Of a DNA stretch of 64,000 bases, positions 38,164 to 62,605 are shown piece by piece. The position numbers and the translations under genes were made by a program. Each line of letters starts with the position of its first letter. Position 1 is the first letter of the stretch. The stretch is taken from the IMG/VR virus record IMGVR_UViG_3300044644_001125, positions 186,001 to 250,000 of that record, one strand, 5' to 3'. The notes under the pieces are model-generated. The model saw only the letters and a program-made list of their open reading frames with translations. It searched no databases and was not told the origin of the DNA.

Positions 38164-38243
38164 TTAGGCTCGCGCCTAACGGCGCTCGCAAAGTATCAAA
38201 AGGGTCTATCCAATAGGCCCTTTTCTTTACCCATCGAAAAAGG

Positions 38244-38271
38244 TTGACATCCATTCGATTTTAGGTATAAT
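38244..38271 (+). promoter_or_regulatory. sigma70-type early promoter, Lcl cluster 1
   Basis: TTGACA-16-TATAAT. Confidence 0.8.
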
Positions 38272-38296
38272 ACATACAGTATCAACTACTAGGAGA

Positions 38297-38383
38297 ATGA
38301 AAATGTTTTACACTCTTACTTTTATCGCATTCTTATTTGTTTTCGCTTTTATGCTTGCTGATTTTCTTACGGACTTCGAATGA
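38297..38383 (+). CDS. 28-aa hydrophobic peptide
   Basis: AGGAG SD; MKMFYTLTFIAFLFVFAFMLADFLTDFE; ATGA-coupled to the next gene. Confidence 0.55.
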   Translation: MKMFYTLTFIAFLFVFAFMLADFLTDFE

Positions 38384-38673
38384 ACATCGAAATAGCACCT
38401 ATTGAATTCCAAAAAGAGTTGAGCTGGGAAGATGCCAGGTTGTACTGCTTTTCGTTTACTATTGATGGGAAAATTGGATGGCGTTTACCTACCAATAAGG
38501 AACAAGAGTTTCTAAAATCACAAAACATTGAAAGTTCCGATGAATGGTATTGGACTTCTAACGACGATGGCGACTGGGTAGTATGCTACAACTGGCATTC
38601 CGAACTGGGATCTCATAGCTTTAAAGAACACATTCGTTACGCTAGACCAGTGAGAGATCTAAAAGATAATTGA
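38380..38673 (+). CDS. DUF1566/Lcl-like paralog 1
   Basis: EIAP..SW..A..YC...IDGKIGWRLPT..WYWTS..RPVR. Confidence 0.8.
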   Translation: MNIEIAPIEFQKELSWEDARLYCFSFTIDGKIGWRLPTNKEQEFLKSQNIESSDEWYWTSNDDGDWVVCYNWHSELGSHSFKEHIRYARPVRDLKDN

Positions 38674-38717
38674 ATCAACGCGAGCACCGCTAGGTGCGAG
38701 CTATCAAGGAAAACAGT

Positions 38718-39056
38718 ATGAACATCGAAATAGCACCAGAAAAGTATTGGACTCGCCTATCCTACGATGAAGCAGTATTCTATTGCTTCACGCTAGGTTA
38801 TCGTTTACCAACCGAAAAAGAATTCCTTGAACTCTCAGTTGCTGAATTTAGATTTGAAGGGCCTTATTGGTCTAGTGAACCTCCTCGTCTTGAGTTCAGA
38901 TATGTTTATATTAACTTACAAAAAGGCAGAGGTGGTTGCACCAGTTCACGTGTTAGTAGTAAATGTTTGGTTTTGCCAATTAGAACTAAACAACCTATTC
39001 TCAAAACGCCAAATCTTTTCAAACGGATTATTAACAGACTATGTACATCGAAATAG
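38718..39056 (+). CDS. DUF1566/Lcl-like paralog 2 (divergent)
   Basis: EIAP, YC..LGYRLPT, YWSS, VLPIR. Confidence 0.75.
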   Translation: MNIEIAPEKYWTRLSYDEAVFYCFTLGYRLPTEKEFLELSVAEFRFEGPYWSSEPPRLEFRYVYINLQKGRGGCTSSRVSSKCLVLPIRTKQPILKTPNLFKRIINRLCTSK

Positions 39057-39394
39057 CACCACCCGAATATCAGGTTAAAATGCCACAAAATACAGCAAAG
39101 ATGTATTGTTTCTCCCTTAACATTGACGGTAAGGTAGGCTGGCGTGAACCAACCACAGATGAATTGCATAAGATTTCGAAATCTATAGATTATGATGAAT
39201 GGATTTCTAACCGTGGTTTTTGGAGTTCCGATGGTTATACTATCTTACGTGATTGTTGGTCATTTCCTTGGTCACTTATCAATGACTACGAACTTAATAC
39301 TCCACGTTTGGTAGTCCCAGTTAGAACCCTACCAGAAGTCGGTTGGTTTGGTAGGTTGATCTACAAATGGAACGGATATAGAGAAATCCTATGA
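39041..39394 (+). CDS. DUF1566/Lcl-like paralog 3 (divergent)
   Basis: YCFSLNIDGKVGWREPT, FWSS, VPVR. Confidence 0.75.
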   Translation: MYIEIAPPEYQVKMPQNTAKMYCFSLNIDGKVGWREPTTDELHKISKSIDYDEWISNRGFWSSDGYTILRDCWSFPWSLINDYELNTPRLVVPVRTLPEVGWFGRLIYKWNGYREIL

Positions 39395-39726
39395 ACTTTG
39401 AAACAGCACCGAAGTCAGCAGTAATTGAAGCAAACTACGATGATGCCAGATTCTACTGTATGGCAAACATTGAGGGTAAAACAGGTTGGAGATTACCAAC
39501 TATGGATGAATTGAATCAAATATACCTTGATAATCGATTACAGGTGCAAAAGTTTGAACCAGTTTGTTACTGGTCATGCACTCCGTATAATGTACTCGAT
39601 AACCCAGTTTTTGACAAAGCCGTTTGGACTCAAGATTTCAGAAAAGGATTCCAAACGTATTGCATACCAGGCAAAAACAATATACCATACAATAGGTATT
39701 TTGTATTACCTGTTCGTGATCTCTAA
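39391..39726 (+). CDS. DUF1566/Lcl-like paralog 4
   Basis: GKTGWRLPTMDEL, YWS, VW.QDF..G, VLPVR. Confidence 0.8.
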   Translation: MNFETAPKSAVIEANYDDARFYCMANIEGKTGWRLPTMDELNQIYLDNRLQVQKFEPVCYWSCTPYNVLDNPVFDKAVWTQDFRKGFQTYCIPGKNNIPYNRYFVLPVRDL

Positions 39727-39752
39727 AAGATAATTAAACCAAGGAATCTAAC

Positions 39753-40040
39753 ATGAAAAGCATTGACGTATACAAACCAACCCACGATGATTGGTACCCT
39801 TCATACCAAGTAGAAGGTTGGGATAACCTACAACTTGTTTGTGTTTCCTTTATTCAGACTGGTCCAGATCCAGCAAGGGGGAATGGCCAATGGCGTGTTT
39901 GCGTTTGGGGTGCAGATGATTGCGGTATGGAAAGAGACTACGACGATCGCAGTGAAGCTATGACTATGTTCTATCGCGTTATCAGTTGGGAGTTTGTAGA
40001 CCTTAAGTTGCTACGTGAACATGGGTTTGTTAGTGCATGA
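39753..40040 (+). CDS. hypothetical protein
   Basis: AGGA SD; unrelated to its neighbours. Confidence 0.65.
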   Translation: MKSIDVYKPTHDDWYPSYQVEGWDNLQLVCVSFIQTGPDPARGNGQWRVCVWGADDCGMERDYDDRSEAMTMFYRVISWEFVDLKLLREHGFVSA

Positions 40041-40330
40041 AATATGAAATCGCGCCTAAATCCACTGAAACCTATTTAAATTGGGGTGATGCCCGTTTGT
40101 ATTGTTTTGCTCTTAATATCGATGGAAAAACCGGTTGGCGATTGCCTACTATCAATGAACTTATCGAAATCTATTATTCGCAACATGATTTAAGAATGGA
40201 TAATTACTGGTCATCTACAGTTGCATGTGACGATACCTACGCAGAAATGTTTGCATTTCACAGGCATATCGAACGTAGAGGTTCAAAATCATGGGGTCAA
40301 TACGTTAGAGCAGTTAGGTCTATTGCTTGA
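40037..40330 (+). CDS. DUF1566/Lcl-like paralog 5
   Basis: GWRLPT..EL, YWSST, YVRAVR. Confidence 0.85.
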   Translation: MKYEIAPKSTETYLNWGDARLYCFALNIDGKTGWRLPTINELIEIYYSQHDLRMDNYWSSTVACDDTYAEMFAFHRHIERRGSKSWGQYVRAVRSIA

Positions 40331-40431
40331 GGTTTATTGCTGGTTTTGGGTTATTATTGTGTGTTGCGAGCACCGCTAGGTGCGAGCTTGTTATAATGAA
40401 AAGGGCCCACATGCGTGAGCCCCATTATCTT

Positions 40432-41595
40432 TTAATCCAACCGTTTACATTTCCAGCCGCCTCGATGGGTTTCTCTAACGCCATTGGAAACTTTTTGCAT
40501 ACCTCGGTATGATAAATTATTATCTTTACAGAATTGACGCATATCACCAACTTTGAAAACTTCACCTTGTGGGTTAATGACATCCCAGTAAACTGGTGTT
40601 CGTTCAACTCGATAATTGATACAGGTCCAACCATGATAATGGCGTTGAGAACCAGATGCCACTTTACACATAGCAGAATAACTAAGGTCATGTTCTACAC
40701 AAAACTTTTTAAAATCATCTGGACAATGGACATTGCCATCTGGGTCAGTGGCCTCCCATTTACACATAGTCGTCAGTCGTTCCGTTTCTAAATGCTTACA
40801 CTTCCAACCACGATGTGTATCTTGTCTGCCATTTGATACGTCTTTCATACACCCTGGATTCAATCCATTTTCTCTACAAAAACGTTCAAGATTTTTAATT
40901 TGAAATACAACACCTAACGGATTTGTAAGTTCCCAATGTTGATCGTGAGGATGATCCATCGTGTTTTTATCCAGCTTCACTTTGGTATTTTTGCGAATCA
41001 CTTCTTCACGAACCTCTTGTGGCGTGCTCAAACACACGCAAGTCCATCCTTTGTGATTCGTTATTTTTCCTTTATCAACCGCATTCATACATGATCGATT
41101 TAACCCGTTGTCCCTGCAATATTTTTCAAGATTGTTAATCTCAATAACTTCGCCGGTTGGAGATGTCAATCTCCAGCGTTTAGTTGCTCGAATCTTCGTA
41201 ACCGTGTTGTTTTTCAACCTAGTTTGATACCCTTTCTTCGCACTCTTACTGGTAGTAACAAATTTCACAGTACCACCATTGTCAACACAATGTTTATTCA
41301 ATGAAAGTGGTTCTTTTCGATGTTTCTTGATGATATCCTGTTCGTACCAATAAACCGCATCAACGTCAGTAGATTCAAATATAATCTCATATTCAAATGC
41401 ACCTTTCCCGTATTCATCGATTAATGCTTCGACATAAGTACTACTAGTAAAGTAGTAAATCCAAAAATCATCTTTTGGTAGTCGTTTTCGATCGATATTT
41501 AATTTACGGTATCCGTAATAGAACTGACCTGTTGGTTTGCATACAAGTTTATACACGTATGCTGGCACACCCGTGCCGTTTTGATAAATACTCAT
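40432..41595 (-). CDS. free-standing GIY-YIG/Seg-like homing endonuclease with repeated C-terminal DNA-binding modules
   Basis: YVYKL....G.FYYGYR...YFTSS; four W.L..P.G....NL..FC..NGL...M..V..G...H.GW.C units; TATAAATA at 41653-41660 (minus). Confidence 0.75.
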   Translation of the reverse strand: MSIYQNGTGVPAYVYKLVCKPTGQFYYGYRKLNIDRKRLPKDDFWIYYFTSSTYVEALIDEYGKGAFEYEIIFESTDVDAVYWYEQDIIKKHRKEPLSLNKHCVDNGGTVKFVTTSKSAKKGYQTRLKNNTVTKIRATKRWRLTSPTGEVIEINNLEKYCRDNGLNRSCMNAVDKGKITNHKGWTCVCLSTPQEVREEVIRKNTKVKLDKNTMDHPHDQHWELTNPLGVVFQIKNLERFCRENGLNPGCMKDVSNGRQDTHRGWKCKHLETERLTTMCKWEATDPDGNVHCPDDFKKFCVEHDLSYSAMCKVASGSQRHYHGWTCINYRVERTPVYWDVINPQGEVFKVGDMRQFCKDNNLSYRGMQKVSNGVRETHRGGWKCKRLD

Positions 41596-41703
41596 GCTGA
41601 TGTTTCCTCTAAATGTTAGATTGGTTGGGCTTTACCGAGCCGCGAACCTACTACTATTTATACGGAATACAAAAAAGAGCCCGTTAAGGCTCTTTTTTTC
41701 ACA

Positions 41704-42138
41704 TCAAGAATCTAATTGTTTACATGTCCATCCCTTGTGACTTTTCCTAACTCCCCGTGATACCTTTCCCATAGTAGACGGATCTAAGCCATTTTCTTTA
41801 CAAAACAGTTCAAGATTACGTATTGTGAATGTGTTGCCTTCAGAATTAGTTAATTCCCAAGTTTTGGTATTAGCCTCGTTTGCAGCTGCCATTGATAAAT
41901 TACCATTTGCAATCCGCGATGCCAATGATTTCTGCGCATTTTCTTTGGTTATCCCACGTTCTCTACAAGTTATCGCAGCTTTATCAGCAGCTATCTGAAA
42001 TGTTCCGTTATTAGTTTTAGTAACTTTTGCTTTTGCCGCACCGGTCACATACGAGTTATTAGCCAATCTAGTTTCACGGATCTTTTGTCCAACTGTTTTA
42101 GTTTCTGCTGTGGTTTCTGTATCTTCAGTCATGTTCAC
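41704..42138 (-). CDS. endonuclease-associated repeat-domain protein without nuclease domain
   Basis: One copy of the same W.L...G..F..NL..FC..NGL module. Confidence 0.65.
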   Translation of the reverse strand: MNMTEDTETTAETKTVGQKIRETRLANNSYVTGAAKAKVTKTNNGTFQIAADKAAITCRERGITKENAQKSLASRIANGNLSMAAANEANTKTWELTNSEGNTFTIRNLELFCKENGLDPSTMGKVSRGVRKSHKGWTCKQLDS

Positions 42139-42236
42139 CTCTGATTAATATTCAAAAAGAATTCATATTATACTATATATTCGCGAGGCACGCTAGTGCC
42201 GAGCCATTGAAAAAGGGCCCGAAGGCCCTTTCTTGG

Positions 42237-43793: not shown

Positions 43794-43965
43794 GCTTTGA
43801 AGTCCTTTTTGGTTGAAGTTTGAACTGCGTTAAGTACTGCACTGCTTGTATTTAGTTATTGGATAGGTTATGATATGCCACGGCTCGCACCTATCGGTGC
43901 TCGCGACAATACACAATAATACAGGCTCGCGAGAATACAATGCAATACAATACAGTAATATATGC

Positions 43966-45862: not shown

Positions 45863-46106
45863 AGTAGGAAAACCACCAGAAAACCGAATGTCGTATGTAG
45901 ATGCTGTGTTGTATTGTTTTTGTTTAGGTGATGGTTGGAGACTGCCAACCCTTGACGAATACAAAGCCATTGAACATGTTATGTGGTACCAAAATGATGA
46001 TTTACAAGATAGTCCCTGTGAATTTCACGTAATACCAGTTAGAGATATTGAACCTACTATGATTAATAGAATACTTTGTCTGATTCACCCAAGGTTTAAA
46101 AGATGA
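45855..46106 (+). CDS. DUF1566/Lcl paralog 12 (shortened)
   Basis: YCFCLGDGWRLPT, IPVRDI. Confidence 0.72.
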   Translation: MIEVGKPPENRMSYVDAVLYCFCLGDGWRLPTLDEYKAIEHVMWYQNDDLQDSPCEFHVIPVRDIEPTMINRILCLIHPRFKR

Positions 46107-46396
46107 TTGAAATAGCACCTAAAGAATATTGGAAAACTGACTTGAATTGGTACGAAGCCAAGATGTATTGTTTTTGTCTTGATATAGATGGTAAAACCGG
46201 TTGGCATTTGCCTGATATGAATTATTTCCACACAAACAAAGTCACACGAGCTGTCAATGATTGGTACTGGACTTCCGAGGACCTTGGATCGGATGCAATG
46301 CAAGTGCGTCCATACGGAATGCACTTTATCGAATGGGACAAGAATGATGCTGGACCTGCTGTTACTATGCCGGTAAGAGATCTAAAAGATAATTGA
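46103..46396 (+). CDS. DUF1566/Lcl paralog 13
   Basis: YCFCLDIDGKTGWHLP, WYWTS, MPVRDLKD. Confidence 0.78.
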   Translation: MIEIAPKEYWKTDLNWYEAKMYCFCLDIDGKTGWHLPDMNYFHTNKVTRAVNDWYWTSEDLGSDAMQVRPYGMHFIEWDKNDAGPAVTMPVRDLKDN

Positions 46397-50361: not shown

Positions 50362-50431
50362 ATTCAATACCCAGCTATAGTCTGGGTATTCTTTTATTAG
50401 GCTCGCACCTAACGGTGCTCGCAAATAATGG

Positions 50432-50459
50432 TTGACATCGGTTATCTTTTAGTTATAAT
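50432..50459 (+). promoter_or_regulatory. sigma70-type early promoter, Lcl cluster 3
   Basis: TTGACA-TCGGTTATCTTTTAGT-TATAAT. Confidence 0.85.
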
Positions 50460-50484
50460 ACGCAAAACTTAACCGGAGGCAATC

Positions 50485-50685
50485 ATGAGAAAATCCCTAT
50501 CACATAAAGAAATCTTAATGCTAAAACTCGATAATCTTTTAGCGACTGCTGAATCACTCGAGGACAAACTCGTAACCGAGAATAATCAATGGCAATATCG
50601 TGCAACCGTCCTACGTAGCGATATTCAAAATTTGATTGACTATGTAGAATGGTCGGTTGAAGAGGCTGAACATCATGAACTTTGA
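50485..50685 (+). CDS. small coiled-coil hypothetical protein
   Basis: GGAGG SD. Confidence 0.6.
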   Translation: MRKSLSHKEILMLKLDNLLATAESLEDKLVTENNQWQYRATVLRSDIQNLIDYVEWSVEEAEHHEL

Positions 50686-50968
50686 AATAGCACCTAAATC
50701 AACTGAGATACAAGCCAATTGGGATAATGCCAAGTTGTATTGCTTTTCTCTCAATATCAATGGAAAAACTGGATGGAGATTACCTACCAAAGACGAACTA
50801 GATGAAATATACCAATCCGAAAATGATTTTAGGAATACATTTTACTGGTCATCTACTGTGGGTAATGGCAACGGCGCCTTGGCTCAGAGTTTCCGCACTG
50901 GCAAACAGTATGACGCCAGTAAGGACAGCGGCGGCGGCCACGTTAGAGCCATTAGGGATTTAACATGA
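50675..50968 (+). CDS. DUF1566/Lcl paralog 14 with DGR-type VR
   Basis: NNC/NNT-patterned 3' end. Confidence 0.88.
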   Translation: MNFEIAPKSTEIQANWDNAKLYCFSLNINGKTGWRLPTKDELDEIYQSENDFRNTFYWSSTVGNGNGALAQSFRTGKQYDASKDSGGGHVRAIRDLT

Positions 50969-51261
50969 AATACGAAATAGCACCTAAATCAACTGAAACA
51001 AGATTAACATGGGAAGAAGCTAGAATGTATTGCTTTTCTCTTAATATCGATGGTAAGATCGGATGGAGATTACCCACTAAAGAAGAACTCAACGAGATTT
51101 ATGAATCAGTAAACGATTTCGAGAAGGCTTGGTACTGGTCCTCTACTGAGAACAATGGCAACACCGCCTGGAGTCAGGGTTTCAACGGTGGCTACCGGAG
51201 CAACGGCGGCAATAAGGTCAACGGCCTTAACTACGTTAGAGCCATCAGATCAATCCCTTAA
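50965..51261 (+). CDS. DUF1566/Lcl paralog 15 with DGR-type VR
   Basis: gag aac aat ggc aac acc gcc tgg agt cag ggt ttc aac ggt ggc...aat aag gtc aac...tac gtt aga gcc. Confidence 0.9.
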   Translation: MKYEIAPKSTETRLTWEEARMYCFSLNIDGKIGWRLPTKEELNEIYESVNDFEKAWYWSSTENNGNTAWSQGFNGGYRSNGGNKVNGLNYVRAIRSIP

Positions 51262-51349
51262 CCTTTAGTATTTTTTGCGAGGCATAAAGCCTAAAAGATG
51301 ATTAATAATAATGCGAGCACCGTTAGGTGCGATTCAATAGGAAAACCAA

Positions 51350-51640
51350 ATGAACTTTGAAATAGCACCTAAATCAACTGAGATAAAAGCAAATTGGGAT
51401 GATGCCAGATTATATTGCTTTGCTCTTAATATAGATGGTAAGACTGGATGGAGATTACCAAATAAAGAAGAATTGAATGAAATCTATGAATCCGAAAATG
51501 ATTTTAGGAATACATTTTACTGGTCATCTACCGAGAACGATGACAGCAACGCATGGATGCAGTCCTTCAACAGTGGTGGTCAGACCTTCAACCTCAAGAG
51601 CATCGACATACTCTACGTTAGAGCAGTGAGAGATATATGA
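51350..51640 (+). CDS. DUF1566/Lcl paralog 16 with DGR-type VR
   Basis: NNC/NNT-patterned 3' end. Confidence 0.9.
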   Translation: MNFEIAPKSTEIKANWDDARLYCFALNIDGKTGWRLPNKEELNEIYESENDFRNTFYWSSTENDDSNAWMQSFNSGGQTFNLKSIDILYVRAVRDI

Positions 51641-51930
51641 ACTTTGAAATAGCACCTAAATCAACTGAGATCCAAGCCAATTGGTATGATGCCAGATTAT
51701 ATTGCTTTGCTCTTAATATAGATGGTAAGACTGGATGGAGATTACCTACCTTAGAAGAATTAAATGAAATTTATGAATCAGAAAATGATTTTGAAAAATG
51801 GGGATATTGGTCTTCTACTGAGAGCAGTGGCGACTACGCCTGGAAGCAGAATTTCAACGGTGGCAACCAGTACACCGGTAATAAGAACTACGGCGGCTAC
51901 TACGTTAGAGCCATCAGATCAATCCCTTAA
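51637..51930 (+). CDS. DUF1566/Lcl paralog 17 with DGR-type VR
   Basis: cag aat ttc aac ggt ggc aac cag tac acc ggt aat aag aac tac. Confidence 0.9.
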   Translation: MNFEIAPKSTEIQANWYDARLYCFALNIDGKTGWRLPTLEELNEIYESENDFEKWGYWSSTESSGDYAWKQNFNGGNQYTGNKNYGGYYVRAIRSIP

Positions 51931-52019
51931 CCTTTGGTATTTTTTTGCGAGGCATAAAGCCTAAAAGATGATTAATAATAATGCGAGCACCGCTAGGTGC
52001 GATCCAATAGGAAAACCAA

Positions 52020-52313
52020 ATGAACTTTGAAATAGCACCTAAATCAACTGAAATTAGACTAAACTGGTTTGATGCCAAGTTGTATTGCTTTGCTCTTAAC
52101 ATAGATGGTAAGACTGGATGGAGATTGCCAGATGAAGAAGAACTCAACGAGATTTATGAATCAGAAAACGATTTCGTTGGTAACTACTACTGGTCCTCTA
52201 CTGAGATCAATAGCTACCTTGTCTGGAGTCAGAGTTTCAGTAATGGCGATCAGGGCAACAGCTCTAAGTACTACGGCTCTGTCTATGTTAGAGCCATCAG
52301 ATCAATCCCTTAA
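52020..52313 (+). CDS. DUF1566/Lcl paralog 18 with DGR-type VR
   Basis: NNC/NNT-patterned 3' end. Confidence 0.9.
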   Translation: MNFEIAPKSTEIRLNWFDAKLYCFALNIDGKTGWRLPDEEELNEIYESENDFVGNYYWSSTEINSYLVWSQSFSNGDQGNSSKYYGSVYVRAIRSIP

Positions 52314-52400
52314 CCTTTTGGCTTTTTGCGAGGCATAAAGCCTAAAAGATGATTAATAACATTGCGAGCACCGCTAGGTGCGAGCCAATAGGAAAACCAA

Positions 52401-52712
52401 ATGAAATTTGAAATAGCACCCAAATCAACAGAGATTCGAGCCAATTGGTATGATGCCAGATTATATTGCTTTGCTCTTAACATAGATGGTAAGACTGGAT
52501 GGAGATTACCAAATAAAGAAGAATTGGATGAAATATACCAATCCGAAAATGATTCCGAAAATGATTTCGAAATTGGTTGGGATTGGTATTGGTCCTCAAC
52601 TGAGTACAATGATGACTTAGTCGTCTGGATTCAGTATTTCTATAATGGGCTTCAGAATAACGGTAAAAAGAACAGCCGCAGCGGATACGTTAGAGCCATC
52701 CGAGATATCTAA
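52401..52712 (+). CDS. DUF1566/Lcl paralog 19 with DGR-type VR
   Basis: Patterned 3' end; duplicated SENDSEND upstream. Confidence 0.88.
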   Translation: MKFEIAPKSTEIRANWYDARLYCFALNIDGKTGWRLPNKEELDEIYQSENDSENDFEIGWDWYWSSTEYNDDLVVWIQYFYNGLQNNGKKNSRSGYVRAIRDI

Positions 52713-52734
52713 ATTTTAATTAAATGGTAGACAA

Positions 52735-53415
52735 ATGAATATTAATCAAGAAATTGCAAGAGTAAAATATCGCCTTAGTAAATTAGAACAACAGCGAGAT
52801 GAATTCCGGAGTATGTTTTTACCAAACAATCGTGATAACAAGGTTGATTGTAATTATAACAAAAACCGTGTTGATAAATGGAGACTGCCTAATGTCTCTA
52901 ACTACGAAGTTAAAGAATGGTTAATTAACCTTGCATACGGTGTGCGTTCAAAATTCGTGACCGCTGATGAATTAATGCATAAATTGCACTCATTGCCTAC
53001 CGAGGTGCATGAGCGTATAATGTGGCACGCAAGTACTGATGGTGGGCAATGTTTCGAAGATCTGTTTAGTGGTGATAGTTCACCTGTTACTGAATCCGCT
53101 GCAAGTGAATCGAATTTTGAAATAGCCCCAAAATCAACCGAAGTTAAAACTAATTGGTACTATGCCAAACTGTATTGTATTGCTCTTAATATCGATGGAA
53201 AGACTGGTTGGCGTATGCCATCTAAAGAAGAACTAAATCAGATATACGAATCTGAAAATGATTTTGAGAAGGATTGGTATTGGTCATCCACTGAGGCTAT
53301 TGGTGAACAAGGTCATGGTGATTATGCTTGGTATCAGCATTTTGGTCCATATCCGGTACCGGACTTCTACAAGAAGTCTTACAAAAGATACATTAGAGCT
53401 ATCAGATCAATATAG
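52735..53415 (+). CDS. DUF1566/Lcl paralog 20 fused to a ~125-aa unrelated N-terminal domain
   Basis: Lcl domain starts at NFEIAPKSTE. Confidence 0.82.
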   Translation: MNINQEIARVKYRLSKLEQQRDEFRSMFLPNNRDNKVDCNYNKNRVDKWRLPNVSNYEVKEWLINLAYGVRSKFVTADELMHKLHSLPTEVHERIMWHASTDGGQCFEDLFSGDSSPVTESAASESNFEIAPKSTEVKTNWYYAKLYCIALNIDGKTGWRMPSKEELNQIYESENDFEKDWYWSSTEAIGEQGHGDYAWYQHFGPYPVPDFYKKSYKRYIRAIRSI

Positions 53416-53443
53416 TTCTCGCGAACCAAACAGGAGACAAAAA

Positions 53444-53740
53444 ATGAACTTTGAAATAGCACCTAAATCGACTGAGATACAAACCAACTGGGAAGAAGCT
53501 AGAATGTATTGCTTTTCTCTTAATATCGATGGTAAGATCGGATGGAGATTGCCAACTAAAGAAGAACTAAACGACATTTATGAATCAGAAAATGATTTTG
53601 AAGAATGGTACTACTGGTCCTCTACTGAGTCCAATGGCTCAAAAGCATGGTTTCAGAATTTCAACGTTGGCCACCAGAGCAGTCACGGCGTTAAGAACAA
53701 CGGCAACATCTACGGTAGAGCCATTAGAGATTTACTATGA
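53444..53740 (+). CDS. DUF1566/Lcl paralog 21 with DGR-type VR
   Basis: AGGAG SD, ATG 53444; patterned 3' end. Confidence 0.9.
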   Translation: MNFEIAPKSTEIQTNWEEARMYCFSLNIDGKIGWRLPTKEELNDIYESENDFEEWYYWSSTESNGSKAWFQNFNVGHQSSHGVKNNGNIYGRAIRDLL

Positions 53741-54042
53741 ACTTTGAAATAGCACCTAAATCAACTGAGATCCAATCCAATTGGGATGATGCCAAGTTGT
53801 ATTGTTTTTCCCTTAATATCGATGGTAAGACTGGATGGAGATTACCTACCAAACAAGAACTGAATGAGATATACCAATCAGAAAATGATTTTGAAAACAA
53901 TTGGTATTGGTCCTCGACCGAGTACTCCTCGACTGAGTACGATGGCATCTTCGTCTGGTATCAGAATATGTCAAACGGAGTTCAGTACAACCGTACTAAG
54001 AACGGCAGCTACTACGTTAGAGCCATTAGATCAATCACTTAA
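53737..54042 (+). CDS. DUF1566/Lcl paralog 22 with DGR-type VR
   Basis: 15-nt tandem duplication (SSTEY x2) at the VR start. Confidence 0.9.
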   Translation: MNFEIAPKSTEIQSNWDDAKLYCFSLNIDGKTGWRLPTKQELNEIYQSENDFENNWYWSSTEYSSTEYDGIFVWYQNMSNGVQYNRTKNGSYYVRAIRSIT

Positions 54043-54056
54043 CCTTTTGGATTATC

Positions 54057-54350
54057 ATGAACTTTGAAATAGCACCAAAATCAACTGAGATAAAAGCAAA
54101 TTGGGATGATGCCAGATTATATTGCTTTGCTCTTAACATAGATGGTAAGACAGGGTGGCGTATGCCATCTAAAGAAGAACTCAACGAGATTTATGAATCA
54201 GTAAACGATTTCGAGAAGGCTTGGTACTGGTCCTCTACTGAGAATAATGGCAACTACGCCTGGGATCAGTTTATGTCGAATGGCTACCAGGCCAGCGGCA
54301 ATAAGAACTACGGCACCTTCTACGTTAGAGCAGTTAGATCAATCCCTTAA
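54057..54350 (+). CDS. DUF1566/Lcl paralog 23 with DGR-type VR
   Basis: Patterned 3' end followed by a hairpin at 54365. Confidence 0.9.
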   Translation: MNFEIAPKSTEIKANWDDARLYCFALNIDGKTGWRMPSKEELNEIYESVNDFEKAWYWSSTENNGNYAWDQFMSNGYQASGNKNYGTFYVRAVRSIP

Positions 54351-54529
54351 CCTTTAGTATTTTTGCGAGCTCCGCTAGGAGCGAGCCAATAAACAATTAA
54401 CCCTTGACTTATCGAATATTCCCTGTATACTACAACTTCGCTACATACTGTAATACAGAAAAACAAACCTTGACTTGTACTAGAAAACAAGTTAAACTAA
54501 CTATAACATTAATAACCTAGGAGTTACGA

Positions 54530-56107: not shown

Positions 56108-57236
56108 CAAAATCTTCAAGAATTACTCGTCTGGTTTCTTGAACACTAGACGAGTACATTTCATATACATACCAACCTTGCATTTCCGCGATTTCTTTTT
56201 TGTACATATCGAATTGATATTTCGCGTCTGCTGTTCTACCATCAAATACCTGACTCCAATTATCCCATTTTTCTTGGTCCCAAATGGGATTTGGGTGGAA
56301 ACATTCACCGTGGTATTCGATGATAATTGCTAATGATGGGATGGTTAAATCGTAGTAGAACCAACGCATTTCGTCTTCGTCAAATATAGCCCATTCTTGG
56401 TTTCCTTCAACCCCAATATAGTATGTTATCTCATACTTATCCAATAGATTTATTATATCCGAAAGAGCAACCAATGATTCGGCACTTGCAGATGATGAAT
56501 TTGTATTTTTACGCTTCCGATTGGCTCGCATATCATTGTATAATCTGGTTCCTTCCTCTATACCATGCTTTGCTATATAAGATTCCAGCGTTGGACTTCG
56601 TTTTTTATTGATTCCCGGTATAGATTCCATGTGGGTTGACCAGTTCTCGTTTCTTTCTTTAAACTTGATAGCACCGAGTTCCTCGCCGTATTTTTTCTGA
56701 TATGTTTCCAATGTATTGGTTGCTTGAACCTGACGCACCAATTCCTTTGCTTCTGCTTCGGTGTATCCTTTCTTAGTCCAATATTTTACATTACGTTGAG
56801 ACACATCATCTCGGCCTCTAGTTTTATCTGCTGATATCAGAGATTTTCTACGCTGAGTTTCACTGGAATGATCGAAGTGTGCAGTTTTCCTAGAGTTAGC
56901 ATCCAAATAAATTATAGTACCATGCATTACGCCATACATTGTTACGTGATAATTTAAGGAACCTATCTTGTACGTTTTTAAATCCAGCCATCTAGCAGCC
57001 CAACCAGATAATCCATACTTAATGAATTTAACAAATGTTTCTCGTCTATCGTTAGTGTATAAACCTTGTTTATCGATTTCTGAAATCTCTTCCAGTTCTG
57101 CTTCGGTTAATGGTCTATCACCAAATGCTTCCTTGTAAAATGGACTGTCCGTTATTCTTGCATGAATTGGTTTAATCAAATCTGGGTTGTATCGTCTTTT
57201 AGTTCTGGCGACAGGTGTTTCAATCGTAGTTTCCAT
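56085..57236 (-). CDS. Vsr-like/PD-(D/E)XK free-standing homing endonuclease
   Basis: Repeated Y..K.G.EEG modules; C-terminal FYYDL.I....IIEYHGECFH...D..K...A...G. Confidence 0.75.
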   Translation of the reverse strand: METTIETPVARTKRRYNPDLIKPIHARITDSPFYKEAFGDRPLTEAELEEISEIDKQGLYTNDRRETFVKFIKYGLSGWAARWLDLKTYKIGSLNYHVTMYGVMHGTIIYLDANSRKTAHFDHSSETQRRKSLISADKTRGRDDVSQRNVKYWTKKGYTEAEAKELVRQVQATNTLETYQKKYGEELGAIKFKERNENWSTHMESIPGINKKRSPTLESYIAKHGIEEGTRLYNDMRANRKRKNTNSSSASAESLVALSDIINLLDKYEITYYIGVEGNQEWAIFDEDEMRWFYYDLTIPSLAIIIEYHGECFHPNPIWDQEKWDNWSQVFDGRTADAKYQFDMYKKEIAEMQGWYVYEMYSSSVQETRRVILEDFAKLGYVL

Positions 57237-57272
57237 AGTTTTATCCTCTTTTGGTTAATTTGTAATATCGTG

Positions 57273-57300
57273 TTGACAAGTAAGATACATATGTTATAAT
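57273..57300 (+). promoter_or_regulatory. sigma70 promoter (extended -10) for the clpA C-half
   Basis: TTGACA-16-TATAAT with TGn. Confidence 0.75.
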
Positions 57301-57339
57301 GAGTCTTCATTCTATTTATTAACCATCAGGAGAGCTACA

Positions 57340-58578
57340 TTGATTACAGAAACACTACCAATTGGAAAAATGTTTGAGATATTGGAACAATATGAGAAAT
57401 TACGCTTCTCCCCAGATCGGGAACAGTTCCTTAATACTCCATTACAAATCCAAAACGAAAACGGCGAATGGATTGACATATCGGCCGCCATTACTAAAGA
57501 AGATACCGGTAGAGAAGTAAGATTCGATAACGGTGATTCGTTAAAAGCTGCTGATAGACATCGCATTTTTAACGGTGAAACCTGCATTTTCTTTGATTCA
57601 CTTAACGTAGGTGATTCTTTGAAAAAAGCTAACGGTGAAACCATCACAGTAACAGAAATTAACACAATCCCAGATACCCTATACTACGACCTTACAGTCG
57701 AGAGTGATACACATTTATACCAAACTGCTAATGGGATCGTCCATCATAACACGGAAACTTGTAGAAAACTAGCAGAAAAGATGCACATGCCATTAGTTCG
57801 TTTTGACATGAGTGAATACCAAGAGAAACACTCAGTGGCAAGATTGATTGGTTCACCTCCTGGTTATGTTGGATTTGAAGACAACGCAGGTCAGTTAATT
57901 ACTAAACTGCAAGAAAATCCACACTGTGTTCTGCTACTAGATGAAATCGAAAAAGCACATCCTGATGTAACAAATATCATGTTACAATTCATGGATAATG
58001 GATTTGTAACTGGTTCTAACGGTAAACAAGCAGATGGTCGTAACTGTATTCTTATTATGACGAGTAACTTGGGTGCTCGTGACAGTGAACGTAATACTAT
58101 CGGTTTTGGTGATTTAGCTAGAACTGGTGAAGATGATAAAGCAATTAACGAATACTTTGCACCTGAATTCCGCAATCGTTTAGATGCTATCATCAAGTTT
58201 GCTCCACTAGAACACAGCACAGTTCTTAAAATCGTGGATAAATTCATTGGTGAGTTAAACGCCCAGTTGAAAGACAAAGATATCTTAATTGAAATCGATG
58301 AAACTACTGCTGAATGGTTAGCTAAACTTGGTTACGATAAGAAAATGGGTGCTAGACCTCTTTCAAGAGTAATCGATACTAAACTGAAAAGTCCATTAAG
58401 TCGTCGTGTTTTATTTGGTGATTTGGTTAACGGTGGTCATGTTAAAGTTACTATTGAAAATGACGAACCCGTTTTCACAGTTTCTGAGTATGTTAAACCA
58501 GTAGTGGAATCAGATCAAAAACTGATCGTTGAAGATGGGCAATTGGTATTAGCTGATGATCACGCAGACGACAACTAA
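57340..58578 (+). CDS. clpA: split-intein C-fragment (137 aa) plus ClpA C-half (275 aa)
   Basis: AGGAG + TTG start; KAADRH (block B), YYDLTV..TH.Y.TANGIVHHN|TETCR; DMSEYQEKHSVARLIGSPPGYVG, LLLDEIEKAHP, PEFRNRLD, GARPL. Confidence 0.92.
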   Translation: MITETLPIGKMFEILEQYEKLRFSPDREQFLNTPLQIQNENGEWIDISAAITKEDTGREVRFDNGDSLKAADRHRIFNGETCIFFDSLNVGDSLKKANGETITVTEINTIPDTLYYDLTVESDTHLYQTANGIVHHNTETCRKLAEKMHMPLVRFDMSEYQEKHSVARLIGSPPGYVGFEDNAGQLITKLQENPHCVLLLDEIEKAHPDVTNIMLQFMDNGFVTGSNGKQADGRNCILIMTSNLGARDSERNTIGFGDLARTGEDDKAINEYFAPEFRNRLDAIIKFAPLEHSTVLKIVDKFIGELNAQLKDKDILIEIDETTAEWLAKLGYDKKMGARPLSRVIDTKLKSPLSRRVLFGDLVNGGHVKVTIENDEPVFTVSEYVKPVVESDQKLIVEDGQLVLADDHADDN

Positions 58579-59215
58579 GAAGTATTATGACAAGTGGCTT
58601 TACAAAGTCACAATAGATGTTAGTCAATACAGTGCTGCGTTGTTAAACTTCAATAAGTTCCGCAATCGTATGAAAGAATTCTGCGAAAACGGTTCTTATT
58701 GTTGGAGTTTTTCCAAACATCAACAACGTTTGTTGAACCTCCATAAAGATGCAATCATTGAATTGATTGATTTTGTAGATATGTATCCAAAAACGGATTG
58801 GACTGCTAGAACGGAATTTGACATTTCTATCTTTACAAATGACGTGAATATGTATAATGCGATGTGTGCTAAGTTTACTGTAATAGAAAGATGGGAACCT
58901 GACTTAACAAATCCTATATTGGATACACCCAATGTTATTTCTGTTAAGAAATTACCTTATGGTAAGTATAGGTTCAAGGTTTTCTTGAAACCACATAAGA
59001 TACTTGATCCAGCTGAAAAGCAGGAATATATCAAGTGGATGAATACACAAGTACCTCGTATTACATTCTCTGAAGCAATCCAAGATTGGATTATGTATAC
59101 AAGATGGTCTGGTGATGCAAGATATATCCTAGTAGAAGATGAACAAACTCTTTTGATGCTAAGGATGCGAAACCAAGCTATTATTGGTAGAATCTACGAA
59201 CATGTCGTAACTTAA
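58556..59215 (+). CDS. hypothetical protein
   Basis: 219-aa ORF overlapping the clpA end. Confidence 0.7.
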   Translation: MITQTTTKKYYDKWLYKVTIDVSQYSAALLNFNKFRNRMKEFCENGSYCWSFSKHQQRLLNLHKDAIIELIDFVDMYPKTDWTARTEFDISIFTNDVNMYNAMCAKFTVIERWEPDLTNPILDTPNVISVKKLPYGKYRFKVFLKPHKILDPAEKQEYIKWMNTQVPRITFSEAIQDWIMYTRWSGDARYILVEDEQTLLMLRMRNQAIIGRIYEHVVT

Positions 59216-59220
59216 CCCCA

Positions 59221-59249
59221 AAGGGTAGTACTCAGGTACTACCCTTTTT
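59221..59249 (+). terminator. Rho-independent terminator
   Basis: AAGGGTAGTAC-TCAG-GTACTACCCTTTTT. Confidence 0.85.
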
Positions 59250-59383
59250 CTTTATGGCTCGTGCCTATCGGCACTCGCTATCCAATATTAGAGTTAAACT
59301 TGTATATATCAATATATACGCATAATATGCGAGCTCCGCTAGGAGCGAGCCTAGAAATACCGAACTTTCAAGCTAAATACGGT

Positions 59384-59737
59384 ATGCAAAAAGAAAGTCA
59401 AATATTAATCTCTAACTACTCAAATGATTCGATGCCTACCGAATTTGCCTATACTTCTAAGCAAAAAGGTGCAGGTTATCAACATAATAACGATGGAAGT
59501 CATCTCGTTGTTTATCAATTTGACCAGTTTAAAGGTACAGTTAAAATCCAAGCAACCCTAGAGTTATATCCGGGTGAACAGGATTGGTTTGACGTGCCCG
59601 AAACAATCCTAGGCGGTGATAGTTCATACATATCCAGTGCAAATTCCTCATTCACATTCTGGGGTAAATTCATTTGGATTAGGGCTGCTTATCAACTAGA
59701 ACAAGGTACTATTGTACAAATCCGGTATCAGATTTAG
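59384..59737 (+). CDS. small beta-sandwich virion-type protein
   Basis: Late promoter at 59374, ATG 59384; G.V.IQATL...P...DWF...F.W.R. Confidence 0.65.
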   Translation: MQKESQILISNYSNDSMPTEFAYTSKQKGAGYQHNNDGSHLVVYQFDQFKGTVKIQATLELYPGEQDWFDVPETILGGDSSYISSANSSFTFWGKFIWIRAAYQLEQGTIVQIRYQI

Positions 59738-60608: not shown

Positions 60609-61229
60609 ATGCTACTTTTAGAATTGTTTAATGTCCGTGAAATGTCACAGATCATCGATCCAGTGACTCCAAAGATAGCAAGCCAAGCCGATAACTCGAT
60701 GTTCGCAAAATACAGACGTTTTTGCGAGCCAGTAGAGAAACTATCCGATACGATTACCTTGTACTACGGTGAAGGTAATACAAGAAATGTTTACATGGCA
60801 GCTAAAAGCGAAGGCGTTGAAGGTGATGAGAAAGTCGTTTACTTAATGGAATTTGAACGAGATTCAAATAGACTATTAGGTGAATTTGCTATCCAACGTT
60901 GGTTATGGATGGATAAAGCGTATAAAGGCGAACTTGGTAATCTTCCAACTCGCATGTTTAATGAACTTATAGACGATTACTTTACGGTTATTGCTGATTC
61001 AGAACAAACACCCGATGGTAAAAAGTTCTGGATGCGACAACTACATGCAGCATTTGGTAGTGGTTTAAATGTCTACTATGCCGATTTAAACAAAAATGTA
61101 TTAAAGCAATTACAGAAACCCGGTGATATTAGTCGTTATGACTTTGCTTATGGTGTTTGGACCAGAGCAGAATCTTCACTTGAAAAGGTTTTTGTTATTT
61201 CAAGCAAAAAACTGAGAGTGACGAAATGA
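60609..61229 (+). CDS. hypothetical protein with MLLLELF leader, possibly degenerate GNAT-like
   Basis: ATG 60609; DSEQTPDGKKFW. Confidence 0.6.
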   Translation: MLLLELFNVREMSQIIDPVTPKIASQADNSMFAKYRRFCEPVEKLSDTITLYYGEGNTRNVYMAAKSEGVEGDEKVVYLMEFERDSNRLLGEFAIQRWLWMDKAYKGELGNLPTRMFNELIDDYFTVIADSEQTPDGKKFWMRQLHAAFGSGLNVYYADLNKNVLKQLQKPGDISRYDFAYGVWTRAESSLEKVFVISSKKLRVTK

Positions 61230-61909
61230 ACATGAGAGATATACTAGATAAACTAGATTTGATTGAAGCTGTCGAAGATACTGATGTTGAGCCAAAAGAT
61301 AATGTACAAAACCCAGAACAACAAAATAGATTGGCACCTAACGGAAAACCAAGCAACTTAAATCCAGTTCAATACCAGCAGGTAAGAACACCTGAATTTA
61401 AGGCATGGTTTGGTGATTGGGAAAATAGCCCACAGTCTGCGAGTAAAGTCGTTGATGAGAATGGCGAACCTATGATAATGTATACTGGAACATCCAGTGA
61501 TAAGGATTTTGATAAATTCAAAACTCCAAAGAATGGTGTATGGTTCAGTAAATCAAGAGAATCCGCCGCAAATTATGCAATGCAGAATGATAGCCAAGAT
61601 GTAAAATATAACCCGAATACTGGAAAATATGATAACATCAATACTGCTAGTAGAGTAATACCGGTGTTCATAAATATTAAAACGCCACATACATCGACCA
61701 AATCCGACTTTGACAGAGTGAATGTTTCTAATTACAAAGCTGCTCAGGCAAAATTATTCAATGAGTTTCGTCAAGTAGGTTATGATGGTGTTCAATGGAA
61801 TTCATCAGATTGGGTGGCTATTGCCAATGCCAATCAATTCAAGTCTGCTATTGGTAATGCCGGATCTTTTAGCCAGAAATCCAGTAAAATTCACGAGAAA
61901 TTGCAATGA
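61226..61909 (+). CDS. ADP-ribosyltransferase-like (ART-PolyVal-type) protein 1
   Basis: VRTPEFKAWFGDW..SKVVDENGEPMIMYTGT; G.WFS; PVFINIK.P; GYDGV; NQFKSAIGN.G.FS. Confidence 0.7.
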   Translation: MNMRDILDKLDLIEAVEDTDVEPKDNVQNPEQQNRLAPNGKPSNLNPVQYQQVRTPEFKAWFGDWENSPQSASKVVDENGEPMIMYTGTSSDKDFDKFKTPKNGVWFSKSRESAANYAMQNDSQDVKYNPNTGKYDNINTASRVIPVFINIKTPHTSTKSDFDRVNVSNYKAAQAKLFNEFRQVGYDGVQWNSSDWVAIANANQFKSAIGNAGSFSQKSSKIHEKLQ

Positions 61910-62604
61910 ACATGAGAGATATCCTTGACAAGTTAAAACTGGTTGAATCTGAAGAACCCACCGCAGATACTACACAAGAACCAGTAAAACCAGAAACTAA
62001 AAGAAAATCGTTGGCCAAAGAACATGGTGAAGTATTCTCAATCGATGATGCTGTAATTGATGTCGATTTTAAAGCAGAATTTGCACCTAGACCACAATCA
62101 GTTATCGAATTCTACGTTCCAAAAGAATTACGTGGGCAAGGTATTGGTACCAAACTATTACAAATGGCTGTTTCCAAGTATCCAATGCTTGGTGGTCAAG
62201 TTAGTTCAATGGCTTCATTGAAGGTATTTTACAACTTAGATTTTAGAAATCCAAGTATTCCTAAAGGATCGATTCAAGATCATGTGGATATTATGAATGA
62301 TTATAGTTCAGTGTATATGGCACATACCGATGATAAAGGTGTACCGTACAGTAAACTTAAAACTGAATCAGTTGATATTAGAACTTTAGTTGATACTATT
62401 GATAAACTAGAATCAGAAATTCTAGCTGAAAAGTCTTTGAGTAAAGCACAACAACGGTTGTTTGGTGCGGTTAAACATGCCCAAGAAACTGGTGATGCAT
62501 CCAGTCCTAAAATAGCAAAGATGGCTAAGTCGATTAGTAAATCAGATGTTAAAGACTTTGCTAGCACTAAGCATAAAGGCCTACCTGAGAAAAAGAAGAA
62601 ATAG
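61906..62604 (+). CDS. GNAT-like domain fused to a DUF3008-like basic tail
   Basis: FYVPKELRGQGIGTKLL; KAQQRLFGA...MAKS.SK.DVKDFASTKHKGLPEKK. Confidence 0.7.
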   Translation: MNMRDILDKLKLVESEEPTADTTQEPVKPETKRKSLAKEHGEVFSIDDAVIDVDFKAEFAPRPQSVIEFYVPKELRGQGIGTKLLQMAVSKYPMLGGQVSSMASLKVFYNLDFRNPSIPKGSIQDHVDIMNDYSSVYMAHTDDKGVPYSKLKTESVDIRTLVDTIDKLESEILAEKSLSKAQQRLFGAVKHAQETGDASSPKIAKMAKSISKSDVKDFASTKHKGLPEKKKK

Positions 62605-62605
62605 T

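What the first reader, a model, noticed from the sequence alone, without database searches (positions are those of the whole stretch)
59257..59350. Possible empty island: reverse and forward hairpins 50 bp apart around a palindrome
Seen: the same reverse...forward hairpin pair that encloses the 3.7-4 kb Lcl islands here encloses only 50 bp. That spacer includes GTATATAT-CA-ATATATAC. It sits between a terminator and a late promoter, as the filled islands do. Inference: an unoccupied or excised insertion site.
Basis: partly seen in the sequence, partly recalled or inferred. Interest (0 to 1): 0.6.

Follow-up and report, generated by a model that had tools for sequence, protein, structure and literature searches.

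The report
Cargo-less pair of phage hairpin repeats
Two mirror-image copies of a 23-base hairpin repeat, the same repeat that borders the accessory-gene islands of this lake jumbo phage, sit 50 bases apart with no gene between them; it is a long-kept boundary element, not a fresh excision scar.

Summary
Window 59256-59278 (+) and 59329-59351 (-) are two copies of a 23-nt repeat, GG-CTCG-N4-TANC-N4'-CTCG-C. It has 12 copies in the window and 52 in the 327-kb lake jumbo-phage genome, 49 of them outside any crudely called ORF.

Its 5-bp stem is kept by compensatory changes only: 98% of cells paired over 64 copies, and no G-T pairs. That points to a selected hairpin, probably acting as DNA.

The same forward...reverse pair does border the two roughly 4-kb Lcl_C islands. 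Island 2 is an insertion into a DnaJ-Clp backbone. A relative (L248) lacks 3.5 kb of island 1, with one hybrid hairpin at the junction, so cassettes come and go by recombination between same-orientation copies.

At this junction about 75 distant relatives have abutting genes and no hairpins. Every relative that has the hairpins (100%, 96% and 76% protein identity) has the same short gene-less spacer. The reverse copy shows two compensated base pairs. The palindrome is not conserved. Four lake data sets show no alternative form.

It is a stable cargo-less boundary pair, closest to PeSL and REP elements. No mobilising enzyme was found. The "empty site" reading is partly supported; "excised" is not.

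The parts
58556..59215 (+). Upstream 219-aa gene, no family match. Conserved backbone gene that follows the Clp ATPase.
   Evidence: ORF list. No Pfam or PHROG family. Homologues in 80 IMG/VR loci, always followed directly by the 117-aa gene.
59220..59247 (+). Intrinsic-terminator hairpin (12-bp stem, 4-nt loop) followed by a T run up to 59255.
   Evidence: Terminator scan. The stop-to-hairpin block that contains it (59216-59255) is 36/41 identical in the 76% relative L123.
59256..59278 (+). Forward copy of the 23-nt hairpin repeat (stem G+TGCC/GGCA+C, loop TATC).
   Evidence: Pattern match. Covariance model 44.1 bits, E 4.9e-8. 23/23 identical in L001, L124 and L123.
59279..59328 (.). 50-nt AT-rich spacer containing the palindrome at 59302-59319. 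Unconstrained filler.
   Evidence: Only 29/50 alignable to the 43-nt spacer of L123. The palindrome is broken in L124 and absent in L123. No promoter match above chance.
59329..59351 (-). Reverse copy of the hairpin repeat (stem G+CTCC/GGAG+C, loop TAGC on its own strand).
   Evidence: Pattern match. Covariance model 40.6 bits, E 3.1e-7. In L123 the stem is CCAC/GTGG: two base pairs changed on both sides.
59352..59361 (+). TAGAAATACC, a variant of the ATAAATAC box found upstream of 15 genes. Possible promoter element; function untested.
   Evidence: It reads AATAAATACC in L123 and TAGCAATACC in L001. Genome counts.
59384..59737 (+). Downstream 117-aa gene (weak match to phrog_13657). Backbone gene.
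50400..54387 (.). Filled island 2: forward copy 50400-50422, an array of Lcl_C genes with inner reverse copies at 51313, 51983 and 52364, and the end copy 54365-54387.
   Evidence: DnaJ (49564-50361) and Clp lie 18-500 nt apart in distant relatives, abutting in L043/L050. The array is 1.26 kb shorter in L001.
38167..42205 (.). Filled island 1: forward copy 38167-38189 and reverse copies at 38680, 40366 and 42183. Holds Lcl_C genes, a GIY-YIG endonuclease gene (40432-41595, minus strand) and a 144-aa gene.
   Evidence: The part 38703-42205 is missing in L248, with one hybrid hairpin at the joint.
43882..43904 (+). Forward copy ahead of a third Lcl_C array (44270-46396). No matching reverse copy was found.

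Best explanation
The feature is a pair of inverted copies of a phage-specific 23-nt hairpin repeat. A conserved CTCG sits on each side of a freely varying but always complementary 4-nt stem, and the loop is TANC.

The hairpin is selected as a structure, most likely in DNA. Pairing is strictly Watson-Crick. Copies lie in either orientation to transcription. Many sit between a terminator and the next promoter, where little RNA is expected.

The repeats mark the edges of accessory-gene cassettes. Recombination between two copies of the same orientation removes or inserts the DNA between them and leaves one hybrid copy. That step is shown. The enzyme is unknown and the mechanism is inferred: either short-homology recombination by the phage's own machinery, or an unknown structure-specific protein.

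The pair at 59256-59351, together with its terminator, was inserted once between two backbone genes in the ancestor of this small clade. It has been maintained since with no cargo. It is a minimal 'terminator, forward copy, filler, reverse copy' boundary module. It uncouples the two genes transcriptionally and could serve as a landing pad for hairpin-bearing cassettes.
For: 1. Family and placement. There are 52 copies in the genome. 49 lie outside any called ORF in a genome that is 89% ORF-covered. There are no copies in 79 loci of distant relatives.

2. Structure. Over 64 copies, 98.1% of stem cells are paired and 82 cells are changed on both sides. 0 of 500 shuffles reach this, there are no one-sided (G-T) pairs, and slid controls give 22-46% paired.

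3. Orthologous compensation at this very locus. The reverse copy is CTCC/GGAG here and CCAC/GTGG in L123. The forward copy is 23/23 identical. Third codon positions of the neighbouring gene are 68% identical and the spacer is about 58%.

4. The compensation lowers complementarity between the two copies, from 18/23 to about 15/23 (my count on the sequences). The local hairpins are therefore what is kept, not one long doublet hairpin.

5. Recombination at the repeats. L248 lacks 3.5 kb. Its single copy carries the left flank of window copy 38680 and the right flank of copy 42183. The sister contig L249 still has the island. G002/L003 has a promoter-ORF-terminator cassette between two same-orientation copies where G000 has one copy. 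Doublets are present or absent at the G000 23.5-kb junction.

6. Insertion into the backbone.

7. Placement beside regulatory signals. Nearby copies of the promoter-associated 9-mer ATCTTTTAG always point away from the hairpin, 21 to 0. Terminators directly precede forward copies.
Against: - Only 6 of 41 indel gaps between G000 and four relatives touch a hairpin. The repeats are not the main driver of indels.
- No locus shows the same forward...reverse pair filled in one genome and empty in another.
- Inverted copies cannot excise cargo by simple recombination.
- No recombinase was found: Y1 transposase, serine resolvase, tyrosine integrase, reverse transcriptase and Avd are all absent.
- Reverse copies sit a constant 13-15 nt ahead of eight gene starts, most of them Lcl_C, which would also fit an RNA role.
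- No transcript ends could be mapped, because the runs are held only as contigs.
Confidence: 0.55

Rival explanations
1. RNA element. The hairpins act in the transcript as processing sites, 3'-end or 5'-end stabilisers, or translation insulators between cistrons. The pair brackets a transcript boundary.
For: Stem covariation. Reverse copies lie 13-15 nt upstream of eight gene starts, most of them Lcl_C. RNA contigs of run X23 stop at 59178 and resume at 59427. The region folds well as RNA, z -6.5.
Against: The same strand-specific flanks and loop are conserved in both orientations to transcription. Forward copies lie just after strong terminators and before promoters. No G-U pair occurs in 320 stem cells, which is unusual for RNA helices. 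No Rfam family matches. Contigs cannot show RNA ends.
Confidence: 0.2
2. Selfish mobile doublet, REPIN-like or MITE-like. The two inverted copies plus spacer are one non-autonomous element, moved by a transposase supplied in trans.
For: 23-nt terminal inverted repeats. The 96-nt unit folds into one long hairpin. Similar doublets with 24-68-nt spacers occur elsewhere in G000 and in relatives, and are present or absent at the 23.5-kb junction.
Against: Spacers of different doublets are unrelated, and the two arms usually carry different stems. No target-site duplication is visible. No Y1/RAYT, resolvase or integrase was found. The ends of the four TnpB elements are unlike the repeat. The compensatory change in L123 preserves the local stem, not the arm-to-arm pairing.
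Confidence: 0.12
3. Excision scar or never-filled attachment site of an Lcl island.
For: Identical edge layout to the filled islands. The block is an insertion relative to the backbone. Cargo size between a forward copy and the last reverse copy ranges from 1 gene (L248) to about 12 genes.
Against: All four hairpin-bearing relatives and four lake populations show only the short form. The pair is maintained with compensatory change over about 20% divergence. The observed deletions leave one copy, not an inverted pair.
Confidence: 0.12
4. Relic of a diversity-generating retroelement. Lcl_C (DUF1566) genes are classic targets of such elements (from memory of that literature), and those targets carry a GC-rich hairpin with a 4-nt loop just after the variable region.
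For: Reverse copies lie 4-52 nt after the stops of Lcl_C genes. The genome has about 76 Lcl_C hits with hypervariable C-terminal parts.
Against: No reverse transcriptase and no Avd in the genome. The pair studied here is not next to any Lcl_C gene. Forward copies have no such context.
Confidence: 0.03

Closest known systems
PeSL cassettes (promoter-early stem-loops) of T4-like phages (PMC2839356; PMC4122927)
   Same: Short conserved intergenic elements that combine stem-loops with terminators and sigma-70-type promoters. They are concentrated among small accessory genes. ORFs between two same-orientation copies are gained or lost, leaving one copy.
   Different: Here the conserved unit is a separate 23-nt hairpin, not the terminator or the promoter itself. 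Its flanks and loop are invariant and its stem covaries freely. It occurs in both orientations and as inverted pairs. The pair studied encloses no promoter above chance. Minicircles were not tested.
REP / BIME / REPIN elements of bacteria
   Same: Short extragenic palindromes in many copies, found singly, as inverted doublets or in small tandem clusters, with the structure conserved.
   Different: No RAYT (Y1) gene in the phage, nor in two bacteria that carry the look-alike core. No GTAG-type 5' tetranucleotide. Doublet arms and spacers are not copies of one another.
Integron attC sites and gene cassettes
   Same: Arrays of small genes, each followed by a structure-conserved, sequence-variable hairpin site. 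Gain and loss happen at the sites.
   Different: No tyrosine integrase. The sites are 23 nt long with an invariant core, not attC-like. The cassettes here often carry their own promoters.
Unnamed 45-nt palindromic repeat of Gordonia, Nocardioides and some Alphaproteobacteria, found here
   Same: The same core, GGCTCG-N4-TANC-N4-CTCGC, with a covarying apical stem and a variable third loop base. It forms tandem clusters. One phage copy (G000 157098) carries the bacterial majority stem.
   Different: The bacterial form has an extra outer helix (TTCGA...ACCTCA plus a variable stem), sits in high-GC genomes and has only 8-24 copies per genome. The search pattern forced 16 of the 23 positions, so kinship is unproven.

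Membership tests
PeSL (T4-like phages) | Composite of a sigma-70-type early promoter and a stem-loop that terminates upstream transcription | tested here: inconclusive
   A terminator is present at 59220-59247, but the spacer has no promoter match above chance. Other copies of the repeat do precede TTGACA...TATAAT promoters.
PeSL (T4-like phages) | Lies among variable accessory genes (hyperplastic regions) | tested here: inconclusive
   The family does: about half of the copies lie within 150 nt of Lcl_C genes. This pair lies between two backbone genes.
PeSL (T4-like phages) | ORFs between two same-orientation copies are lost or gained, leaving one copy | tested here: met
   L248 against the window and L249; G002/L003 against G000. 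Shown for the family, not for this pair, whose copies are inverted.
PeSL (T4-like phages) | Circular excision products in infected cells | not testable with these tools
   Needs inverse PCR on an infected culture.
REP / REPIN | Short extragenic imperfect palindrome in many copies | tested here: met
   52 copies, 49 outside called ORFs.
REP / REPIN | Inverted doublets that are the replicating unit (arms and spacer copied together) | tested here: not met
   Doublets exist, but their spacers are unrelated and their arms carry different stems.
REP / REPIN | Cognate RAYT (Y1 transposase) in the genome | tested here: not met
   PF01797 is absent from the phage. The host is unknown.
MITE | Terminal inverted repeats with a target-site duplication and a conserved interior | tested here: not met
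   Inverted ends are present. No duplicated flank is seen and the interiors are unrelated.
Integron cassette array | IntI tyrosine recombinase and attC-type sites | tested here: not met
   PF00589 is absent.
Diversity-generating retroelement target | Reverse transcriptase, accessory protein and template repeat | tested here: not met
   PF00078 and PF05635 are absent. A template repeat was not searched for.
IS200/IS605 ends or PATE | Subterminal hairpins matching those of a resident TnpA/TnpB element | tested here: not met
   Four TnpB genes are present, but their ends carry other hairpins. No TnpA.

The most novel reading that the evidence does not exclude
The hairpin is the recognition site of an undescribed structure-specific DNA recombination or nicking system. 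That system would move gene cassettes without any known integrase, transposase or reverse transcriptase. Its site core (CTCG, stem, TANC, stem, CTCG) would be shared between a lake jumbo phage and the palindromic repeats of Gordonia, Nocardioides and some Alphaproteobacteria. The gene-less pair would then be a standing docking site.
Probability: 0.15. Interest if true: 0.8.

Novelty: new variant of a known kind. Interest (0 to 1): 0.5.

Why it matters
Jumbo phages carry large, fast-changing sets of accessory genes, and how those sets are shuffled is poorly known outside the T4 group.

Here a sharply defined, structure-constrained 23-nt hairpin marks the cassette edges. One clean event shows 3.5 kb lost or gained exactly between two copies. 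That gives a concrete site to test for a recombination mechanism and for a binding protein.

The pair studied shows that such boundary modules can persist without cargo. If the look-alike repeats in Actinomycetota are truly related, the element would link phage cassette shuffling to an unexplained bacterial repeat family, and might hint at the host.

Tried and rejected
- GenBank phages: no DNA or protein match for the junction genes. The nearest Clp is 38% identical.
- Rfam: nothing for the locus, for the bacterial look-alike, or for the Clp insert.
- Promoter in the spacer: my eye-read TTGTAT-N17-TAATAT does not pass the scan. The matches found are at chance level, and the spacer is not conserved.
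- The palindrome as a functional site: rejected. It is broken in L124 and absent in L123.
- T4-type late promoter: TATAAATA is depleted in this genome.
- Hairpins as the general cause of indels: only 6 of 41 gaps.
- Transposase or recombinase searches: Y1, resolvase, integrase, reverse transcriptase and Avd are all absent. The TnpB element ends are unrelated to the repeat.
- The 383-aa ORF in the Clp insert and the 387-aa GIY-YIG protein are unrelated.
- Long doublet hairpin as the selected structure: rejected, because the compensated change in L123 weakens arm-to-arm pairing.
- Literature search for the bacterial core string: no paper. A general search on jumbo-phage intergenic repeats gave nothing useful.
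- My first genome scan used a mistyped pattern and found nothing. It was corrected.
- Read laying showed no alternative junction. The runs are held only as contigs, so rare forms and RNA ends are invisible.

Full report
**Setting**

The window is bases 186001-250000 of a 327,256-bp IMG/VR virus record, with 36-40% G+C across the window. Relatives' contigs join the two ends of the record. It comes from lake water: 24 runs from 21 studies hold parts of the stretch. No GenBank phage is close. The nearest Clp protein is 38% identical.

**The observation**

Window 59256-59278 (+) and 59329-59351 (-) are two copies of a 23-nt repeat that I write GG-CTCG-N4-TANC-N4'-CTCG-C. They are separated by exactly 50 nt. 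The spacer contains the 8+2+8 palindrome at 59302-59319. A 12-bp terminator hairpin with a T run lies at 59220-59247.

- The loose pattern occurs 11 times in the window against 0.13 expected.
- A covariance model built from 64 copies finds 12 copies at 38-48 bits. The next hit scores 17 bits.
- Genome-wide there are 52 copies.
- 49 of them lie outside any crudely called ORF, although those ORFs cover 89% of the genome.

**The hairpin is a selected structure**

I aligned 64 copies from this genome and its close relatives and counted the 5-bp stem: the G of the first CTCG plus N4, against N4' plus the C of the second CTCG.

- 98.1% of stem cells are paired, and four of the five pairs change on both sides.
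- 82 cells carry double changes, and 0 of 500 shuffles reach this.
- Slid registers give 22-46% pairing.
- Not one pair is changed on one side only, so there are no G-T pairs.

Flanks and loop (T, A, any base, C) are invariant or nearly so. The strict Watson-Crick pairing, the use of both orientations relative to transcription, and the position of many copies between a terminator and the next promoter make a DNA-level structure more likely than an RNA one. This is an inference, not a demonstration.

**What the repeats border**

The genome has about 76 such hits.

In the window a forward copy opens each of two 4-kb blocks (38167 and 50400). Reverse copies follow Lcl genes inside the blocks and close them (42183 and 54365).

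Island 2 is an insertion into a conserved backbone. In distant relatives the DnaJ homologue (window 49564-50361) and the Clp ATPase lie 18-500 nt apart, only 18 nt in L043/L050. The Clp gene is followed by the 219-aa and 117-aa genes.

**Cassettes come and go at the repeats**

- Contig L248 (PhoH 80% identical) lacks window 38703-42205. That 3.5 kb holds Lcl genes, a GIY-YIG endonuclease gene and a 144-aa gene.
- At the joint there is one hairpin copy. Its left flank is that of window copy 38680 and its right flank is that of copy 42183. Both window copies have the same orientation.
- The sister contig L249 keeps the island, and its right-hand copy has the stem and loop seen in L248's single copy.
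- G002/L003 carries a promoter-ORF-terminator cassette between two same-orientation copies where G000 has a single copy.
- At the G000 23.5-kb junction four relatives have a forward/reverse doublet with 25-68-nt spacers, and G000 has none.
- The Lcl array of island 2 is 1.26 kb shorter in L001.

On the other hand, only 6 of 41 indel gaps between G000 and four relatives touch a hairpin. The repeats are sites of exchange, but not the main cause of indels.

**This junction in relatives**

- In about 75 distant relatives (219-aa protein 29-41% identical) the two genes abut, with 13-22 nt between the aligned ends. None of these loci holds the repeat anywhere.
- Three closer relatives have the pair:
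  - L001 (100%): identical apart from one base after the reverse copy.
  - L124 (96%): the pair is identical, but the palindrome has two changes that break it.
  - L123 (76%): details in the next list.
- In L123 the terminator block is 36/41 identical and the forward copy is 23/23 identical.
- Its spacer is 43 nt and barely alignable (29/50 with gaps), with no palindrome.
- Its reverse copy has stem CCAC/GTGG instead of CTCC/GGAG, that is, two base pairs changed on both sides.
- Its leader to the ATG is 25/32 identical.
- For scale, the neighbouring gene is 80% identical in DNA and 68% at third codon positions.

The compensated change lowers the complementarity between the two copies (18/23 here, about 15/23 in L123, my count on the sequences). 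So each local hairpin is what is maintained, not the long 96-nt fold predicted.

Contigs from four lake runs show no joint or alternative form at 59216-59383. Two DNA contigs span it without gaps. Contigs drop rare variants, so this shows presence of the short form, not absence of others.

**Reading**

The 168-bp block (terminator, forward copy, filler, reverse copy, leader) was inserted between two backbone genes in the ancestor of this small clade and has been kept since without cargo.

It has the edge layout of the islands, so "island without content" is a fair description. "Excised" is not supported, for three reasons:
- the pair is old;
- it is under selection;
- the documented deletions leave one copy rather than an inverted pair.

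"Unoccupied docking site" remains possible but has no positive evidence. No locus was found that is filled in one genome and empty in another between the same forward and reverse copies.

**Mechanism: what is shown and what is inferred**

Shown:
- the repeat family and its placement;
- the structural constraint on the stem;
- the insertion into the backbone;
- one precise hairpin-to-hairpin 3.5-kb indel, and one cassette between same-orientation copies.

Inferred:
- that the hairpin acts as DNA;
- that exchange uses either the phage's short-homology recombination (as proposed for PeSLs, PMC2839356) or an unknown structure-specific protein;
- that the pair insulates the two genes transcriptionally.

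No candidate enzyme was found. Y1 transposase, resolvase, tyrosine integrase, reverse transcriptase and Avd are all absent. The four TnpB elements have other end hairpins.

**Comparison with known systems**

The closest analogue is the PeSL cassette of T4-like phages (PMC2839356, PMC4122927). Both are intergenic stem-loop/promoter modules among accessory genes, at which ORFs are exchanged. The differences:
- the conserved unit here is a separate, sharply defined hairpin with a covarying stem;
- it occurs in both orientations;
- it can stand without a promoter.

It also resembles REP/REPIN elements in form. It lacks a RAYT gene, and its doublets are not copied as units. Integron, retroelement-target, MITE and IS200/IS605-end readings each fail a defining test (see the membership table).

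**A lead from bacterial genomes**

Most hits are one repeat family in Gordonia, Nocardioides, other Actinomycetota and a few Alphaproteobacteria. It is a roughly 45-nt palindrome whose apex is the same core, again with a covarying apical stem.

- There are 24 copies in one Gordonia genome and 8 in one Nocardioides genome, against 0 for the reversed pattern.
- It has no Rfam family.
- Neither genome has a RAYT gene.
- No paper holds the string.

The pattern forced 16 of the 23 positions, so kinship is unproven. One phage copy (G000 157098) does carry the bacterial majority stem.

**Verdict**

This is a real, well-defined element: a new variant of the PeSL/REP kind, with a committed but only partly demonstrated mechanism.

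Noticed in passing
window 54530-56107 (+), 56085-57236 (-), 57340-58578 (+): The Clp-type ATPase gene is fractured at the P-loop of its second ATPase domain. The first ORF ends GTGK followed by C plus 25 residues and a stop. The second ORF starts with about 137 extra residues ending VHHN, followed by TE. A 383-aa ORF lies between them on the other strand. This looks like an atypical split intein with a free-standing endonuclease-like gene. The gene is intact in L001, L123 and all distant relatives. An insert-free joint (about 55990 to 57781) is present in lake DNA run X4 and RNA run X23. Pfam Intein_splicing matches only weakly (E 0.0012)..
   Followed up: partly
window 42237-43793 (-), residues 104-340: The PhoH-like protein carries an insert of about 237 aa in its P-loop (GTGK | AQPL ... 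VNHN | TLL). Distant relatives lack it, and their two halves are contiguous. It is probably an intein beginning with Ala. The Hom_end_hint match is weak (E 0.002)..
   Followed up: partly
whole genome G000; e.g. window 50444-50452: The 9-mer ATCTTTTAG (extended consensus AATTATCTTTTAG) occurs 247 times against 6.5 expected, on both strands. It often forms inverted pairs 20-22 nt apart around a TTGACA box, or sits directly before TATAAT. It may be an operator or an extended early-promoter element. Copies near a hairpin always point away from it (21 to 0)..
   Followed up: partly
whole genome G000; window 38380-40330, 44270-46396, 50675-54350: Very large expansion of small Lcl_C (DUF1566) genes: about 76 domain hits, in arrays, with hypervariable C-terminal halves. 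No reverse transcriptase is present..
   Followed up: partly
G000 136646-137929, 172502-173779 (-), 182523-183791, 252990-254261 (all outside the window): Four TnpB-like genes (Cas12f1-like_TNB, E down to 1e-27) without any TnpA. Two of them are 92% identical elements of about 1.44 kb with their own end hairpins..
   Followed up: partly
window 40432-41595 (-): A free-standing GIY-YIG (SegE-like) endonuclease gene with a NUMOD-like domain lies inside island 1. A second GIY-YIG gene lies at G000 110456-110707, also near a hairpin copy..
   Followed up: no
loci L128-L247 (Gordonia, Nocardioides, other Actinomycetota, some Alphaproteobacteria): An apparently undescribed palindromic repeat of about 45 nt, with TTCGA-[core]-ACCTCA inside a variable outer stem. 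It occurs 8-24 times per genome, sometimes in tandem at about 40-nt spacing. It has no Rfam family, and the two genomes checked have no RAYT..
   Followed up: partly
window 61226-61909 and 62546-63418 (+): Two paralogous proteins with an ART-PolyVal ADP-ribosyltransferase domain (E 1e-15 and 8e-17). Between them lies a small GNAT/DUF3008 protein (61906-62604)..
   Followed up: no
whole genome G000: The T4 late-promoter octamer TATAAATA is strongly depleted (7 against 55 expected). ATAAATAC occurs 22 times, 19 of them not fully inside called ORFs, and 15 lie 4-56 nt upstream of starts..
   Followed up: no
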